NCBI GenBank assembly: GCA_048013815.1
Contig: CM106585.1
Coordinates: 2,046,001-2,110,000 of the forward strand
Length of the DNA stretch: 64,000 bases
Direction of reading: 5' to 3'
From: Setoptus koraiensis
Lineage: Eukaryota > Animalia > Arthropoda
Position numbers and translations under genes: made by a program. The notes beneath the pieces are model-generated. The model was not told the DNA's origin, searched no databases, and saw only the letters and a program-made list of their open reading frames with translations. Of this stretch, positions 21,200-27,066 are shown piece by piece. The stretch's first letter is position 1; each line of letters opens with the position of its first letter.

Positions 21200-21785
21200 A
21201 GTAATGGCATGGCCGGGAAAGAGGGGGGAGCGAATAAAGGCAAGCGCTGTTGTTGTTGCTTTTTATCGCGCGGACTTTAGTCACACACACACACACACAC
21301 ACACCATGGCATGGCGGATGGTACATATATAAGTAGGCATCGAACAAAACGCATACGTCCGCTTCTAGTCGTTCTCGTCTAAGCGCGCGGCGCTGCTGTG
21401 AACTCGCTGTGGCAACACACACACACACACATTCTATATAATACATACAGTAATACATACAGTGTAGGATGATTCTATAATTCGTCGTCATCCTTGAAGA
21501 CATGCACACACACACACCCGCCTTGTGCATGCACGACAGGCACACACACACACCGGGGTGAGACGTGTATGGTCTGCCGGGGAGCATGGCGCACAGTCTG
21601 AGCCATACACTGTATGCCATAGTCTATGGCCCATGAACTGTATGGCATACCGTCTGTGGCGCACACAGGCCAGACAGGCCGACTGGCCGACTGGCTCACC
21701 GACAGACAAAGGCAGAGAGCATCGAACGAGACAAAAAGTGGCAAATTATCACTGGTGCCGGCGCACAATTCTACGCTGCCCCCCG

Positions 21786-21816
<31 letters not shown>

Positions 21817-22033
21817 ATCCGCAACCCGACATTGTGACGGCGATAATACCGTGGGGCGACACTGGGCCTCTCTTTCGGCAAAGGTGAACTGGCCGCCGCT
21901 TTGAGTGGCGCTGACTCCCCGAATGGGCGTCGTCTGTTGTTGCCAACAGGATGAGCGTAAAAATAAAAATGGAGGGATAATCCATCCGTGAGCAGCACAA
22001 GATTATGCCCGACGACTCTGTGTGTGTGTGTGC

Positions 22034-22077
<44 letters not shown>

Positions 22078-23060
22078 GTGTGTGCGTGCGTGTGAGAGTA
22101 TAAAGTAAAGATAATAATAATAATACTGCTGGTGGTGGTGACAGTAATTGTAAGATAAAGGCGGACAGTGTCACATTGGGCCAACTTGATCGCTGGCTCG
22201 GATCATCACCGCCAGAAGTCGTTGTTGTCGGTTGCTGGCATATAGTCGGGGAGCATGTACATTTGTTAGTTGTTGCTGTTGTCGTCGTCGTTGTTGTTGT
22301 TGTTGCTGTTAGCGTGAACTAGACTAGTCGCTAGTGGCATTTCAAGAGTAATGGCTCAACTCGCACAAGGGGCAACCACCAACTATATATCGTGGGGCAG
22401 GCCAACAAGGACACAACAGCAGCAACAACAGGCTAGCTGACTCACTGAGAGAATTGTTGAGGCAGACAGGCCTGGCAACAATCAACAGCAACCACCACCA
22501 CCGACAACAACAACTGAGCCGACACTTGAGAGTATATTTTTGCCATGGATGCAGCAGTGGTTGTTGCAGCTTGTTCTATGTAGCTGCCTGGTGCTGTCGC
22601 TGAGATCACAGTGGATCATTCATCGATGATTGTCAGCCTGTCATGCAAGCGCACAACAGCGAGAGATAGGTAGGTAGGTTATAACATTTATCCACCATCT
22701 CTTTGAGATATTCACTATATAACGCACACAATTCAATGCTGTAACTCACTGCTAATGTAGGAACTGAGCCATAGATTGGATCAGATCAAATTGACTCAAG
22801 AGTCTCGAAAAAGTATATAGAACACACAACTAATACATACTATAAGGTACAAACAAGCGCACACACACACACACACACACACACTCTCATTGCTCGCACT
22901 CACACTCGCTAGCGCTCATTACAGCGATAAGTTATCGCCGATCGCCGATGAGAAACAAAAAATAACCATTTAATATATATTTATATAAAAACCAATATAT
23001 ATATCTTTATATATATATACATAGACATATATATATATACACATATCTACATACATGTCT
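19909..23060. repeat. Cluster of (CA/TG)n, (CT)n, (GTT)n and (AT)n microsatellites upstream of the homeobox gene
   Basis: More than ten dinucleotide tracts, e.g. near 20527, 20950, 21012, 21172, 21282, 21786, 22018 and 22860, in GC/CpG-richer DNA. All ORFs here are VC/HT repeat artefacts. Confidence 0.9.
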
Positions 23061-23186
23061 CACAAAAGTCAGCCAGAGAAAATATCACATCACAAGACAA
23101 CCAAATCCTAATGATATACTTACTTACCATTGAACAATCGGACACTCACTCAATTAAATACTTGTTAGATATACCAGTATCCCAAA

Positions 23187-24698
23187 ATGTCTAAAATTTC
23201 TAAAGGTAACAAATTCAATGCTCCCAAAGACAATGTCAAGCAACAACAACCATCATCCACCTCCTTGTTGGCCATAAATCAACCGTCCGCTTCCTCTTTG
23301 GCCAGCCTATTGTCTTGCCAAAGAAATGTAAATAGAAGCTCCACAACAAGCAAAAATAAGAAACAACTCAATAATTCGGCTCCTATCAATGCTAGCCTCC
23401 CTAAAAAGAAAAATACCAAAAATATCAGCAGTGAACAGCAATTAAACTACAATTATAATAATAATATTAGTAATAGTAATAACAACACTCATACTACTAA
23501 TACCTACAGCGATAACATGACACAAAAATTTGATGCAATCACACTCAGATTGCTGGAATCACTCTTCACCATCAATGAACGTCCATGTAGTGAGGCCATC
23601 GAAATGATAGCGCAAAGAATAAAATCTGACTTCACCACTGTCTCTCATTGGTTCCATGTCAAAAGAAATAGATCGCAACAGTTCCAAGAGAGAAATCAAG
23701 CCTCTAGTTTATTAAGAAATAATCCTCAAACGAAAAACAAGAGAAAAGAACAAACATATGATATCACTGATGATGATAATATTACCACCCCAAGTAACAA
23801 TAGTATCAATACTTGTAACAATAACAACAAAAGATTGAACATTACCAAGAATCATCGCACATCCACCGAGTCTTCATCTGCAGATTCCTCTACAAATTCC
23901 AATCTGATCTTCCCGTTCGATGCTAGTCAACTTCTGAAGCATCTTCAACAACAATTATTGCAACAGCAACAATTGCAACAGCAACAAATGCAACAGCAGC
24001 TATTGGAAAAAAATAACAAATCTATTTATGATGACAGTTACGATCTAGATGATAGGTTAGAAGACGATCTCCAACCAGATGTACCACTCAACGATATCGA
24101 TTATTACGCATCCTCAAATTCGGCTGCACCAAGTGCCGACTGTGAAGACTATGATGATGTGGATATCCAAGATTATTCCTTCGAAGAGATAGCCGCAGTT
24201 TCCGAAATGGTCAGACATAGACGGATGACCATGGGCCTTTCACAAACTAAGGCGAGCCAGAGTTTCAGAGCATTCACCGGCGGCCAATGCGAATTCGGAG
24301 ACAACTTTATCGCTCAATTTGAGAGTATGCAAGCAGAACAGCATACTGCAAAGTGGGCTCTGAGATCGTTCGGTCCATGGCTGGATTATATTGAAGGAGA
24401 GCTTAGCTTGGGCCGCGAACTATTATTCATGGCACATGATGATCCCACACGGACAGCACGACGCCGCGAGGGCCGAGTATTTACCTTTTCTGAATACCAG
24501 AGAACAATTCTTGAGAATTGCTTTGCGGAAAGCCAGTACCTCACACCTGAACAATTCGACGAATTGTCGCGTACAATAAGAGTCCCTAACAGAAGCTTGA
24601 AAACCTGGTTCAAGAACAGAAGAAGCAAGCAGCGTTCGCAGTCAAAAGTATCAGAAACAAATGTTGTGAAATCATGTAATAAGTTCGTGGTACATTAA
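23187..24698 (+). CDS. Divergent intronless POU-related transcription factor: atypical homeodomain + POU-specific-like domain + K50 homeodomain
   Basis: 503-aa ORF. HD1 (~23517-23680) FDAITLRLLESLFTINERPCSEAIEMIAQRIKSDFTTVSHWFHVKR. POU-specific-like domain (~24183-24400) EEIAAVSEMVRHRRMTMGLSQTKASQ...IAQFESMQ...WLDYIE. HD2 (~24459-24640) RRREGRVFTFSEYQRTILENCFAESQYLT...LKTWFKNRRSKQR. Asn- and Gln-rich linkers. Confidence 0.85.
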   Translation: MSKISKGNKFNAPKDNVKQQQPSSTSLLAINQPSASSLASLLSCQRNVNRSSTTSKNKKQLNNSAPINASLPKKKNTKNISSEQQLNYNYNNNISNSNNNTHTTNTYSDNMTQKFDAITLRLLESLFTINERPCSEAIEMIAQRIKSDFTTVSHWFHVKRNRSQQFQERNQASSLLRNNPQTKNKRKEQTYDITDDDNITTPSNNSINTCNNNNKRLNITKNHRTSTESSSADSSTNSNLIFPFDASQLLKHLQQQLLQQQQLQQQQMQQQLLEKNNKSIYDDSYDLDDRLEDDLQPDVPLNDIDYYASSNSAAPSADCEDYDDVDIQDYSFEEIAAVSEMVRHRRMTMGLSQTKASQSFRAFTGGQCEFGDNFIAQFESMQAEQHTAKWALRSFGPWLDYIEGELSLGRELLFMAHDDPTRTARRREGRVFTFSEYQRTILENCFAESQYLTPEQFDELSRTIRVPNRSLKTWFKNRRSKQRSQSKVSETNVVKSCNKFVVH

Positions 24699-24960: not shown

Positions 24961-27066
24961 TCACACAGCATCTTCTCTTATCCTACAACACCCTTCTTGT
25001 ATATATCTAGTAGGACCAGATTGCAAAATGGTCTGATTATTATCTTTCACTGTATTTTGATCCACAGAAATAATACTTTGATTGTTAGTGTCGAAATCTG
25101 AATAGAAAATTGTATTGGGTGTGCGTCGATTACTGTCATTAGCTACTACACTCTTGGTGGTATTACTTTTAGGTAATTTTTTAGACCCCATTTTTCTGAA
25201 CCAGCCAGTTCCAGTGGAATTAGTATTACAGTTAAGATTATTGGTAATCGGTTTCTTCCTTGCACTATTATTCGATAACTTAGATTCCTCAAAAAAAGTC
25301 AGCACGTGATTAGGATGAATGCACGACGGTAGTGAAAGAGTCCTGTTCATACCTGGGCCAATATCTAAGTCTAGATGATCCACGATAGTAGTGTCTGGTC
25401 TTTTGGGTCTGAATCTTGCTGATCTACAATGATTTCTACTTCGTAAAGCTCTCGTGGCCACATCTACTTCACGTTCAGTGATTCTAAATCCTTCCAAATC
25501 ATCATTTTTCACGATTTCTCTTTCTCTGGCAAACGATTTCAGCCATTCCTCTTTTTCTTTTTGATTTCGTGTTGTAAAAACAAACCATTTTTGTTGCTCA
25601 GAACAATAAAGCTTGAAACTTTTTCGAACCTTATATTCCTCAACATCCACTACTTCAGTCACCGTGTCCATGCAAACTCTGCCCCTCATAATAAGACTAT
25701 TACGTTTTAGCAAGTCTTTCTTAAAATAAACTAACAGGTGGTCGAATAAGTACAGCTGAACTCCTTGAGACCATGTGTGAGATGTCATTTTAGTTACTTC
25801 TCCGCAATGGATGAGAATAGAACTAGTTTCCCATAACTTTGGCCCAAACCAATTATCAATTTTGTCTTGCAGCGAGATGAGTTCCGCCAGGGATTCTATG
25901 CGACGCTTACGCTCGTTGGCTAAGTTGGCGCAGTTACGCATAGATTCTAATGCATTCAGGACAGGTAAATAATCTTCATGATCTTTAGGAGTGTGCTTAA
26001 GTAGCTCATTCAACTGTAGAGGGTATTTGCATATTTTCTGGATTGGTGTTAGTAGGAAACCATCCAAAGATATATCAATCATACTTCGTAGTAGACGGCA
26101 TGCTTCAAAAAATCGAGCATATCTTGGTTTGACATATAAATCCTGTAACTCACTAATAGCGTTAGGATGGTTATTACAATAATGATAGTAAACTTCAAAT
26201 CCTTTTTCGTAGTCCAAGAAGCATTGTCCAACTTCACTCGCTGACAGATGCGACCATTCTATACATGACTCCAGTCTATTCAGGAAGTCACATTGGAAGT
26301 CGTATAGTTGTTCGATATTCGAAAATATAGTAGAGATCCTCACAGCATTAAACATTTCTGGATGTCTCCTAGCCGGATATAAGTAACCTTCTATAACGTC
26401 TTTTAAATGTTTCACGAAGTCTCTTTCGCTATTGATCAGCTCCAAAACGACATTAGCTCTCACCTTACTCTTTTTGATAGATTGCTCTTTTTCATGGTTG
26501 TCATCGTCGATTTGTGTTGATTGTTTGCCTTCCGAGATTTGCAATTGATCATTATTAGTAGGAATACTATCTACTTGATCAATTTTAATTGAAGACTGCT
26601 CTCTAGGGAGACACAACGAAGTCTGTTGTATATAACTGTAATATGCAATTAGTTCATGAAGAGGCACAGTTGGTTGCTTCGACAAGACTGAGGCCAATGT
26701 TTCTTGAGAGTCACCGTAGTAATCGTCCCGATCTGAAGTGGCTAGATCTTCCTCCTCGTCATCCCCTTCATCTCCACAATTCGAAAATGATTTTTGCGCA
26801 ACATGTGAAAGATCTTCCAAATCTGATTCGTCGTTCTGAAAATCGTGATCTTGCTCTTGCGTGCATTCATTTGTGACTAGAATTTTAGGTTGCGAAAAGA
26901 AATCATGATTGTCATCGGGATTATTTAGTCTACGGAGTTGATTGGTTGCCGAACTATTTTGTTCTTCGATAGATGTTGCGGATGCCATGTGATTATTTGT
27001 AACATTGTTACGCAGCCTATTAGTTGATTCTGTGGTATCTTTTTCAATATCCGCCTCCATATCCAA
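24961..27066 (-). CDS. Dbl-family Rho GEF (DH-PH), ARHGEF4/ARHGEF9/SPATA13-like; single exon
   Basis: 701-aa ORF. RANVVLELINSERDFVKHLKDVIEGY...IFSNIEQLY.FQ...YCNNHP...RFFEACRL...DISLDGFLLTPIQKICKYPLQL.ELLK.T...INERKRR-like, then a PH domain (LYLFDHLLVYFKKDLLKRNSLIMRGR...EKEEWL). These are Asef/collybistin hallmarks. Confidence 0.92.
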   Translation of the reverse strand: MDMEADIEKDTTESTNRLRNNVTNNHMASATSIEEQNSSATNQLRRLNNPDDNHDFFSQPKILVTNECTQEQDHDFQNDESDLEDLSHVAQKSFSNCGDEGDDEEEDLATSDRDDYYGDSQETLASVLSKQPTVPLHELIAYYSYIQQTSLCLPREQSSIKIDQVDSIPTNNDQLQISEGKQSTQIDDDNHEKEQSIKKSKVRANVVLELINSERDFVKHLKDVIEGYLYPARRHPEMFNAVRISTIFSNIEQLYDFQCDFLNRLESCIEWSHLSASEVGQCFLDYEKGFEVYYHYCNNHPNAISELQDLYVKPRYARFFEACRLLRSMIDISLDGFLLTPIQKICKYPLQLNELLKHTPKDHEDYLPVLNALESMRNCANLANERKRRIESLAELISLQDKIDNWFGPKLWETSSILIHCGEVTKMTSHTWSQGVQLYLFDHLLVYFKKDLLKRNSLIMRGRVCMDTVTEVVDVEEYKVRKSFKLYCSEQQKWFVFTTRNQKEKEEWLKSFAREREIVKNDDLEGFRITEREVDVATRALRSRNHCRSARFRPKRPDTTIVDHLDLDIGPGMNRTLSLPSCIHPNHVLTFFEESKLSNNSARKKPITNNLNCNTNSTGTGWFRKMGSKKLPKSNTTKSVVANDSNRRTPNTIFYSDFDTNNQSIISVDQNTVKDNNQTILQSGPTRYIQEGCCRIREDAV

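What the first reader, a model, noticed from the sequence alone, without database searches (positions are those of the whole stretch)
23187..24698. Novel transcription-factor architecture: homeodomain - POU-specific domain - K50 homeodomain
Seen: three DNA-binding-type modules in one intronless ORF. The middle one aligns by eye to class VI POU (EEI...RR.(S/T)(L/M)GL(T/S)QT...I..FE...WL...E) and is followed after a ~19-aa linker by a homeodomain. Established: canonical POU proteins have one POU-specific domain plus one homeodomain with Cys50 (WFCNRR). Lys50 (WFKNRR here) defines Bicoid/Otx/Pitx-type TAATCC specificity. The C-terminal HD (TFSEYQ..LE..F....YL) looks more ANTP/PRD-like than POU-like, while the extra N-terminal HD looks more POU-HD-like (N..P...I..IA....D...V..WF). 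Inference: a lineage-specific chimeric or shuffled POU derivative with rewired specificity. Best candidate here for an undescribed regulator.
Basis: partly seen in the sequence, partly recalled or inferred. Interest (0 to 1): 0.85.

Follow-up and report, generated by a model that had tools for sequence, protein, structure and literature searches.

The report
Mite POU factor with swapped homeodomain
An intact, strongly conserved mite gene encodes a DNA-binding regulator that joins a divergent POU-specific domain to a lysine-50 homeodomain of a different homeobox family, plus an extra degenerate homeodomain; I found no description of this arrangement.

Summary
Window 23187..24698 (+) is one uninterrupted 503-codon ORF. 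Pfam, PDB sequence search and AlphaFold/Foldseek all confirm three modules: an N-terminal homeodomain fold, a POU-specific domain, and a C-terminal homeodomain with Lys50.

- **Real gene:** an orthologue in a second species has the same architecture and the same RhoGEF neighbour. dN/dS is 0.066 overall, 0.005 in the POU-specific domain and 0.017 in the C-terminal homeodomain.
- **Start corrected:** conservation begins at Met111 (nt 23517). The conserved protein is 393 aa.
- **N-terminal homeodomain:** it has no basic arm and Val replaces the near-invariant Asn51. It is probably not a standard DNA reader.
- **POU-specific domain:** it belongs to a POU clade found here only alongside mite-type proteins, with rewritten base-contact residues (Q44D, T45N, R49Q).
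- **Both homeodomains:** they belong to a separate "multi-homeodomain" family that includes Aceria tosichella "Double homeobox protein 1".

The best reading is a module-replacement chimera with composite specificity. An ancestral mosaic is not excluded. Read-level transcription evidence could not be obtained. I rate it a new variant of a known kind, of moderate interest.

The parts
23187..23516 (+). Non-conserved 5' extension of the ORF (residues 1-110, low-complexity, rich in S, N and K). It may be 5' UTR or a species-specific N-terminal extension.
   Evidence: The orthologue L001 has a stop two codons before the Met equivalent to residue 111, and no DNA similarity upstream of it.
23517..24698 (+). 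Conserved intronless coding sequence (393 aa plus stop) of the chimeric homeodomain-like / POU-specific / Lys50-homeodomain factor.
   Evidence: The orthologue P0001 is 93% identical over aligned residues. dN/dS is 0.066 at dS 0.53. The RhoGEF neighbour is shared.
23517..23678 (+). N-terminal homeodomain-like module (residues 111-164). It reads W48 F49 H50 V51 K52 R53, so it has no Asn51, and it has no basic N-terminal arm.
   Evidence: Pfam Homeodomain 27.5 bits. AlphaFold three-helix model, pLDDT 86, TM about 0.8 to homeodomains. Nearest kin are the distal modules of the mite multi-homeodomain family, at up to 44.6 bits. dN/dS 0.047.
23931..24011 (+). Glutamine-rich stretch (residues 249-275).
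   Evidence: Read directly from the translation.
24027..24179 (+). Acidic, aromatic-rich region (residues 281-331, net charge -17). Its role as a transactivation region is inferred.
   Evidence: Composition. Nearly identical in the orthologue.
24180..24401 (+). Divergent POU-specific domain (residues 332-405). Its recognition helix reads GDNFIAQFE where canonical POU proteins have SQTTICRFE. Q27-equivalent Gln353 and the RR pair are kept. The equivalents of Q44, T45 and R49 are Asp372, Asn373 and Gln377.
   Evidence: Pfam Pou 30.2 bits alone. POU6F1 E 5e-7. The top 30 Foldseek hits are all POU domains. Alignment A2. Clade with divergent POU families A and B at 98/98. dN/dS 0.005.
24402..24464 (+). 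21-aa linker (residues 406-426). It carries the motif GRELLFM, which is shared with divergent POU families A and B. The junction between POU-like and multi-homeodomain-like sequence lies at about residues 417-426.
   Evidence: Alignment A2. 100% identical in the orthologue despite dS 0.67.
24465..24644 (+). C-terminal homeodomain (residues 427-486) with W48 F49 K50 N51 R52 R53. Lys50 lies at nt 24612-24614.
   Evidence: Pfam Homeodomain 55.2 bits. Sister to the C-terminal homeodomain of the mite multi-homeodomain family at 98/91. An AU test rejects placing it with POU homeodomains without that family, p 0.026. dN/dS 0.017.

Best explanation
This is a functional, intronless gene in what earlier scan notes describe as an eriophyoid mite. 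It encodes a sequence-specific transcription factor whose conserved form is 393 aa (window 23517..24698). From N to C it has:
- a degenerate homeodomain-like module without Asn51;
- a long low-complexity, glutamine-rich and very acidic region;
- a divergent POU-specific domain;
- a conserved 21-aa linker;
- a homeodomain with Lys50.

The parts come from two homeobox families that I found only next to mite-type proteins. The POU-specific domain and linker resemble two divergent POU families. The two homeodomains resemble a "multi-homeodomain" family built from one to three Asn51-less modules plus a Lys50 homeodomain. In this gene the POU-specific domain sits where that family carries its proximal homeodomain-like module. 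The most likely origin is therefore replacement of one module by recombination between paralogous homeobox genes.

Inferred mechanism:
- The Lys50 homeodomain anchors the protein on a TAATCC-like core.
- The tethered POU-specific domain keeps its backbone-contact residues but has new base-contact residues (Asp, Asn and Gln in place of Gln44, Thr45 and Arg49). It would read a neighbouring half-site that is not the octamer ATGC.
- The N-terminal module acts in protein contacts or non-specific DNA contacts.
- The acidic region activates transcription.

What is shown: the architecture, the folds, purifying selection and the kinship of each domain. What is inferred: DNA specificity, the roles of the N-terminal module and the acidic region, and the direction of the evolutionary event.
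For: - The ORF is intact.
- All three domains are found by Pfam, the bipartite POU match by PDB sequence search, and the folds by AlphaFold plus Foldseek.
- An independent assembly of a second species carries the same architecture in one ORF, next to the same RhoGEF gene.
- dN/dS is 0.066 overall. By domain it is 0.005 (POUs), 0.017 (C-terminal homeodomain) and 0.047 (N-terminal module). The neighbouring RhoGEF gives 0.068.
- Domain-by-domain phmmer gives different nearest kin. The POU-specific domain is closest to family B (48 bits) and family A (37). The C-terminal homeodomain is closest to the multi-homeodomain family (72-77 bits) against 18-39 bits for A and B. The N-terminal module is closest to the distal modules of the multi-homeodomain family (33-45 bits).
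- In the homeodomain tree the query pair joins the multi-homeodomain family at 98/91. Families A and B join canonical POU homeodomains at 85/77.
- The AU test rejects a POU placement of this homeodomain without the multi-homeodomain family, p 0.026.
- In the POU-specific-domain tree the query, A and B form a clade at 98/98 against canonical POU. The query sits with B at 82/88.
- Similarity to A and B runs through the linker motif and stops just before the homeodomain arm.
- Family B lies at a different locus, next to ATG8, in several species.
- The roles of Lys50 and of the POU-specific contact residues come from established structural knowledge of Bicoid/Otx-type homeodomains and the Oct-1 POU-DNA complex.
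Against: - The only hint is one run guessed to be RNA that holds 37% of the sampled words of the 3' 599 bases.
- DNA binding was not measured. The POU-specific domain has net charge -3 and an Asp at the head of its recognition helix, so it may not bind DNA.
- Position 5 of the C-terminal homeodomain is Val, not Arg.
- AU tests do not reject a single clade holding this homeodomain, the multi-homeodomain family and the POU homeodomains (p 0.12-0.27). The mosaic could therefore be ancestral rather than a swap.
- Only two species are known to carry the gene.
- Trees built on 60-75 columns are weak.
Confidence: 0.68

Rival explanations
1. The mosaic is ancestral, not a swap. An early mite POU-class gene already had N-terminal homeodomain-like modules, a POU-specific domain and a Lys50 homeodomain. 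This gene keeps that state. The multi-homeodomain family later lost the POU-specific domain, and families A and B lost or never had the N-terminal modules.
For: - AU tests do not reject one clade for this homeodomain, the multi-homeodomain family and the divergent or canonical POU homeodomains: p 0.16, 0.12 and 0.27.
- Family B also has Lys50, and its IPSRNI motif before helix 3 matches VPSRNIK of the multi-homeodomain family.
Against: - The free tree puts A and B with canonical POU homeodomains and this homeodomain elsewhere.
- The sharp change of nearest kin at residues 417-426 fits a junction.
- Only two species carry the architecture, against many clusters of the other families.
Confidence: 0.22
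2. Only the Lys50 homeodomain binds DNA. The POU-specific domain and the N-terminal homeodomain-like module have become protein-interaction modules, and the protein works as an ordinary Lys50 homeodomain factor with cofactor docking sites.
For: - All three canonical base-contact residues of the POU-specific domain are replaced, and an acidic residue sits at position 44.
- The domain's net charge is -3.
- The N-terminal module lacks Asn51 and a basic arm. Its position 50 differs between the two orthologues, His against Asp.
Against: - Backbone-contact residues of the POU-specific domain are kept (the RR pair, Gln27, and the fold core F50 and E51).
- The new recognition-helix residues are polar and fully conserved, with dN/dS 0.005.
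- A canonical POU5-like domain in the same alignment also has net charge -2.
Confidence: 0.3
3. The gene is an artefact or dead: an assembly fusion, a frameshift read-through, or an untranscribed pseudogene.
For: Read-level RNA evidence could not be obtained.
Against: - The same single-ORF architecture stands in an independent assembly of another species with conserved synteny.
- Purifying selection is strong in every domain at dS about 0.5-1.0.
- Several DNA runs hold 100% of the sampled words.
Confidence: 0.03

Closest known systems
Canonical POU-class transcription factors (Oct-1, Pit-1, Brn-5/POU6F1)
   Same: A POU-specific four-helix domain is tethered by a flexible linker (21 aa here) to a homeodomain. 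The best PDB sequence hit is POU6F1, and the 30 best structural hits are all POU domains. The RR pair, Gln27 and the F50-E51 core of the POU-specific domain are kept.
   Different: The homeodomain is not POU-type and has Lys50 where POU proteins have Cys50. The base-contact residues Gln44, Thr45 and Arg49 are Asp, Asn and Gln. There is an extra N-terminal homeodomain-like module.
Divergent POU families A (P0014, P0022, P0152) and B (P0020, P0021, P0023, P0096, P0102, P0153); known only from Logan assemblies, unnamed, taxonomy not checked
   Same: The POU-specific domains form one clade at 98/98. Shared features are Asp44, the FRAFTGG / FRAYT motif, the linker motif G(R/K)(E/Q)L.(F/M)M, and a non-Cys residue at homeodomain position 50.
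   Different: Their homeodomains group with POU homeodomains (85/77) and score only 18-39 bits against this one. No N-terminal homeodomain-like module was seen in them. Family B sits at a different locus, next to ATG8.
Mite multi-homeodomain family (UniRef A0A6G1S3H3, Aceria tosichella 'Double homeobox protein 1'; P0002-P0006, P0008-P0013, P0017-P0019)
   Same: The C-terminal Lys50 homeodomain shares the TFSEYQR...WFKNRRSKQR signature (sister at 98/91). The family also has N-terminal Asn51-less homeodomain-like modules with the LLExLF.IN..P...AIE.IAQR signature.
   Different: That family has a second, proximal homeodomain-like module directly before the Lys50 homeodomain and no POU-specific domain. 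Here a POU-specific domain occupies that place.
Lys50 homeodomains (Bicoid, Otx, Pitx, Goosecoid, CRX)
   Same: Lys at position 50 with the WFKNRR helix. By established knowledge this directs recognition of TAATCC-type sites. CRX, OTX2 and Bicoid are among the PDB hits.
   Different: PRD-class membership is not shown. Outside the mite families, the best-scoring matches are sequences I judged Hhex-like and Cdx-like by eye. Position 5 is Val.
HDX (highly divergent homeobox), placed tentatively in the POU class
   Same: It is an atypical member at the edge of the POU class.
   Different: According to Holland et al. 2007 (PMC2211742), HDX has no POU-specific domain. I recognised no HDX-like protein among the hits I read.

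Membership tests
POU class of homeobox genes | A POU-specific domain lies N-terminal to the homeodomain. | tested here: met
   Pfam Pou scores 30.2 bits for the domain alone (cut-off 27) and 25.5 bits in the whole protein. POU6F1 E 5e-7. The top 30 Foldseek hits are all POU domains.
POU class of homeobox genes | The homeodomain belongs to the monophyletic POU homeodomain group, typically with Cys50. | tested here: not met
   The homeodomain has Lys50 and is sister to the mite multi-homeodomain family at 98/91. The AU test rejects a POU placement without that family, p 0.026. A joint clade including that family is not rejected, p 0.16.
POU class of homeobox genes | Canonical base-contact residues of the POU-specific recognition helix (Gln44, Thr45, Arg49 in Oct-1 numbering). 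| tested here: not met
   Alignment A2 shows GDNFIAQFE against SQTTICRFE, giving Asp372, Asn373 and Gln377.
POU class of homeobox genes | A flexible linker of roughly 15-56 aa lies between the two subdomains. | tested here: met
   The linker is 21 aa (residues 406-426), and the model has low pLDDT between the two folded domains.
POU class VI (POU6 / pdm3) | The POU-specific domain groups with class VI members. | tested here: inconclusive
   POU6F1 is the best PDB hit. In the tree, however, the domain sits in a clade with divergent families A and B, separate from all five canonical sequences available, including two I judged POU6-like by eye. No named full reference set of the six classes was available.
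Mite multi-homeodomain family (Aceria tosichella 'Double homeobox protein 1') | A C-terminal Lys50 homeodomain with the TFSEYQR...WFKNRRSKQR signature. | tested here: met
   72-77 bits by phmmer and sister position at 98/91.
Mite multi-homeodomain family (Aceria tosichella 'Double homeobox protein 1') | A proximal Asn51-less homeodomain-like module lies directly upstream of the Lys50 homeodomain. | tested here: not met
   A POU-specific domain occupies that position. Only the distal-type module is present.
PRD-class Lys50 homeodomains (Otx, Pitx, Gsc, Bicoid-like specificity) | Lys at homeodomain position 50. | tested here: met
   WFKNRR, with Lys476 at position 50.
PRD-class Lys50 homeodomains (Otx, Pitx, Gsc, Bicoid-like specificity) | Binding to TAATCC-type sites. 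| not testable with these tools
   This needs a protein-binding microarray, HT-SELEX or EMSA.

The most novel reading that the evidence does not exclude
This would be a naturally occurring, selectively maintained domain-swap transcription factor. A POU-specific domain with rewritten base-contact residues has been grafted in front of a non-POU Lys50 homeodomain, in place of a homeodomain-like module. That would create a bipartite DNA reader with a composite specificity not seen in any described homeobox class. It would also be one of several shuffled homeobox genes in a miniaturised eriophyoid genome, since earlier scan notes list chimeric LIM-homeobox genes there.
Probability: 0.45. Interest if true: 0.7.

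Novelty: new variant of a known kind. Interest (0 to 1): 0.55.

Why it matters
POU factors are the textbook example of two tethered DNA-binding modules that evolved together. The POU homeodomain forms a single clade and nearly always carries Cys50. This gene pairs a POU-specific domain with a homeodomain from another family that carries the specificity-switching Lys50. It also changes all three base-contact residues of the POU-specific domain, and it is under purifying selection as strong as its housekeeping-type neighbour.

It therefore offers a natural test of how freely such modules can be recombined and how composite specificity arises. It also adds to the picture of unusual homeobox evolution in eriophyoid mites, whose streamlined genome and loss of conserved transcription factors were described for Aculops lycopersici (PMC7738191). 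The interest is limited by its narrow distribution, with two species known, and by the lack of any functional data.

Tried and rejected
- **RNA reads:** There is therefore no read-level transcription test. The DNA alignment started at 23100, and the local tblastn used a copy with those places masked.
- **HDX as the known family:** rejected. Holland et al. 2007 state that HDX has no POU-specific domain.
- **CUT/ONECUT or HNF1 for the middle domain:** the protein-atlas feature search ranked a ONECUT cluster first at 0.85, a lead-level score. Pfam gave no CUT or HNF-1 match, and the Foldseek top 30 were all POU, with HNF-1A at rank 32.
- **Hhex origin of the C-terminal homeodomain:** Hhex-like proteins (named by eye) are the best matches outside the mite families, at 42-47 bits. 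The tree places the query outside the Hhex-like/Cdx-like group, whose separating branch has 95/97 support.
- **N-terminal homeodomain as POU-like:** a profile of the module family scored various multi-homeodomain proteins and family A's homeodomain similarly. It showed no preference for canonical POU homeodomains.
- **Tandem paralogues:** none found in the window.
- **Region-restricted word search:** the search with the POUs-plus-homeodomain region found only the orthologue.
- **Literature:** I searched for POU-specific domain with two homeodomains, for domain shuffling, for mite or chelicerate homeobox surveys, and for Eriophyoidea. No description of this architecture turned up. A search for the SRA accessions did not identify the sample species.
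- **Coexistence in one genome:** look-ups of family B contigs did not hit the orthologue's sample, so coexistence of the paralogues in one genome is not shown directly.
Full report
**Observation**

Window 23187..24698 on the + strand is a single open reading frame of 503 codons. Pfam finds three modules:
- a Homeodomain at residues 433-483, E 6e-17 in the whole protein and 55.2 bits when scanned alone;
- a Pou domain at residues 333-382;
- a second, weaker Homeodomain match in the N-terminal part, 27.5 bits against a cut-off of 22.9 when scanned alone.

The Pou match scores 25.5 bits in the whole protein, just under the gathering score of 27. It scores 30.2 bits (E 4e-7) when the domain is scanned alone.

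The best solved-structure sequence match is POU6F1/Brn-5 (3d1n), E 5e-7, aligned over residues 332-481 in one stretch. Isolated homeodomains such as CDX2, PRH/Hhex and CRX follow.

An AlphaFold model of residues 322-490, built on a 17-sequence alignment, has mean pLDDT 81. It shows four helices, a low-confidence linker, then three helices. Its 30 best Foldseek matches in the PDB are all bipartite POU domains. The N-terminal module folds as a three-helix bundle (pLDDT 86). It superposes on many homeodomains at TM about 0.8.

**Is it a real gene?**

A word search of 5.8 billion protein clusters and an exhaustive HMMER scan of 1.84 billion representatives each found exactly one close relative, P0001. 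P0001 is encoded on a 12.8-kb contig of an independent Logan assembly. It lies in one ORF with the same domain order. The same DH-PH RhoGEF gene follows on the opposite strand.

The two coding sequences are 93% identical over aligned residues. Nei-Gojobori dN/dS values are as follows:

| Region | dN/dS | Note |
|---|---|---|
| Whole conserved CDS | 0.066 | dS 0.53 |
| N-terminal module | 0.047 | |
| Low-complexity middle | 0.20 | |
| POU-specific domain | 0.005 | dS about 1.0 |
| 21-aa linker | 0 | |
| C-terminal homeodomain | 0.017 | |

The neighbouring RhoGEF gives 0.068 at dS 0.68. This gene is therefore as constrained as a conserved neighbour. That rules out an assembly fusion or a pseudogene for practical purposes.

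One correction concerns the start. The orthologue's ORF begins at the Met that corresponds to residue 111 here, with a stop two codons upstream. The DNA alignment loses all similarity upstream of that ATG. The conserved coding sequence is 23517..24698 (393 aa). The first 110 codons of the window's ORF may or may not be translated.

**Transcription**

I have no read-level evidence. I kept those places out of all later searches.

The run index lists one run guessed to be RNA that holds 37% of the sampled words of the last 599 bases. Several runs of unstated type, presumably DNA, hold all of them. This is a hint of expression and no more.

**Anatomy in detail**

- **N-terminal module.** In homeodomain numbering it starts at about position 4, so it has no basic arm. 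It keeps the core residues L16, F20, W48, F49 and R53. It reads W-F-H-V-K-R, so the near-invariant DNA-contacting Asn51 is Val. Position 50 differs between the two orthologues, His against Asp.
- **Middle region.** It contains a glutamine-rich stretch and a 51-residue region of net charge -17 that is almost invariant between the species.
- **POU-specific domain.** It keeps the RR pair, the LSQ (Gln27) motif and the F50-E51 core. Its recognition helix reads GDNFIAQFE where canonical POU proteins have SQTTICRFE. By established knowledge of the Oct-1 complex, Gln44, Thr45 and Arg49 contact bases. Here they are Asp372, Asn373 and Gln377.
- **Linker.** It is 21 aa and identical in both species.
- **C-terminal homeodomain.** It has W48 F49 K50 N51 R52 R53 and a basic stretch before it, but Val at position 5.

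**Kinship of each module**

Domain-by-domain phmmer against the retrieved proteins gives discordant nearest relatives.

*POU-specific domain.* It is closest to two families that carry Pfam Pou plus Homeodomain and are known only from Logan assemblies. I call them:
- family B (P0020, P0021, P0023, P0096, P0102, P0153; up to 48 bits; their homeodomain reads FFKNRR);
- family A (P0014, P0022, P0152; 37 bits; WFTNRR).

All share Asp at position 44 and a linker motif G(R/K)(E/Q)L.(F/M)M. I did not check their taxonomy.

*The two homeodomains.* They are closest to a different family represented by Aceria tosichella "Double homeobox protein 1" and a dozen Logan clusters. That family has one to three homeodomain-like modules that all lack Asn51. 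They are followed, after about 17 residues, by an almost invariant Lys50 homeodomain. The scores are:
- this gene's C-terminal homeodomain: 72-77 bits against that family, but only 18-39 bits against families A and B;
- this gene's N-terminal module against that family's distal modules: 33-45 bits;
- this gene's N-terminal module against its proximal modules: 24-30 bits.

*Trees.*
- In a 76-sequence homeodomain tree the query pair is sister to the multi-homeodomain family (98/91). Families A and B join the canonical POU homeodomains (85/77).
- An AU test rejects placing the query homeodomain with the POU homeodomains without the multi-homeodomain family (p 0.026).
- In a tree of POU-specific domains the query, A and B form a clade (98/98) apart from the five canonical POU sequences available. 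The query sits with B (82/88).
- The best-scoring matches outside these families are homeodomains I judged Hhex-like and Cdx-like by eye, but the tree does not place the query with them.

**Interpretation**

The protein is a mosaic. It has the ends of a multi-homeodomain gene, and a POU-specific domain plus linker of the A/B type sits where the proximal homeodomain-like module would be. Similarity to A and B runs through the linker motif. It stops about ten residues before the homeodomain, where similarity to the multi-homeodomain family begins.

Family B lies next to ATG8 in several species, a different locus from this gene. The simplest account is module replacement by recombination between paralogous homeobox genes in a recent eriophyoid ancestor.

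The alternative is that the mosaic is ancestral and the other families lost parts. It cannot be excluded. AU tests do not reject a single clade of this homeodomain, the multi-homeodomain family and the POU homeodomains (p 0.12-0.27). Family B also shares Lys50 and an IPSRNI-like motif with the multi-homeodomain family.

**Likely mechanism (inferred)**

- The Lys50 homeodomain should bind a TAATCC-type core, as Lys50 homeodomains do.
- The tethered POU-specific domain keeps backbone-contact residues. It has new polar residues on its recognition helix that are completely conserved. It most likely reads an adjacent half-site different from the octamer ATGC half-site.
- The N-terminal module has no Asn51, no arm, and a variable position 50. 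It is more likely a protein-contact or non-specific module.
- The acidic region is a candidate activation domain.

A rival reading is that the POU-specific domain no longer binds DNA, given its net charge of -3 and Asp at position 44. A canonical POU5-like domain in the same alignment also has net charge -2.

**Comparison with what is known**

The protein works like a POU factor, with two tethered helix-turn-helix modules. It fails two defining features of the POU class: a POU-type homeodomain and the canonical contact residues. It also fails one feature of the multi-homeodomain family, the proximal module.

HDX, the odd member of the POU class, has no POU-specific domain (PMC2211742). The eLife paper on the Aculops lycopersici genome discusses loss of transcription factors but not this gene (PMC7738191). 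Full-text searches found no description of a homeodomain, POU-specific domain, homeodomain arrangement.

Earlier notes of this scan are unchecked leads. They call the genome an eriophyoid mite's. They list other divergent POU genes and chimeric LIM-homeobox genes in it.

**Verdict**

It needs correction on four points:
- the start codon;
- the supposed class VI affinity;
- the supposed POU-like nature of the N-terminal homeodomain;
- that homeodomain's likely loss of standard DNA reading.

This is a new variant of a known kind. It is of moderate interest, and transcription and DNA specificity remain to be shown.

Noticed in passing
L001:521-1840 (orthologue P0001), after the N-terminal module; corresponds to window about 23660-23740: The orthologue carries three tandem copies of a unit of about 26 aa (KRNRSQQFEEKN..SSLLR.N.Q..IKR) directly after the homeodomain-like module. 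The window species has one copy. This is a 52-aa in-frame expansion in an otherwise tightly conserved gene.
   Followed up: partly
window 24961-27066 (-): A 701-aa DH-PH RhoGEF ORF converges on the 3' end of the gene, leaving 262 bp between the two stop codons. Its orthologue carries Pfam RhoGEF and SOS1_NGEF_PH. It is syntenic in the second species, at 90% amino-acid identity and dN/dS 0.068. The orthologous locus also has a Gpi16 gene beyond it.
   Followed up: partly
window about 21771-22184: Long dinucleotide microsatellites of CA/TG and GA type. They show up as His-Thr and Arg-Glu repeat ORFs upstream of the gene, in a stretch with higher G+C (about 0.50 against about 0.35 in the gene's 5' part).
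   Followed up: no
L003:700-1320, L004:700-1320, L008:107-592 (divergent POU family B): Family B genes are short and intronless. Their POU-specific domains carry Asp44, Asn45 and His49, and their homeodomains read FFKNRR. In several species they sit next to an ATG8-like gene. The family appears to be undescribed, with no named member in the collections searched.
   Followed up: partly
P0002-P0019 (mite multi-homeodomain family): The family has an almost invariant C-terminal Lys50 homeodomain and one to three homeodomain-like modules. In those modules position 51 is never Asn (A, K, T, L, M, C, V, S or E). N23, P26 and F49 are invariant and W48 nearly so. The only named member is Aceria tosichella 'Double homeobox protein 1', an automatic name.
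   Followed up: partly
I did not examine it further and sent none of it to any search tool afterwards.
   Followed up: no
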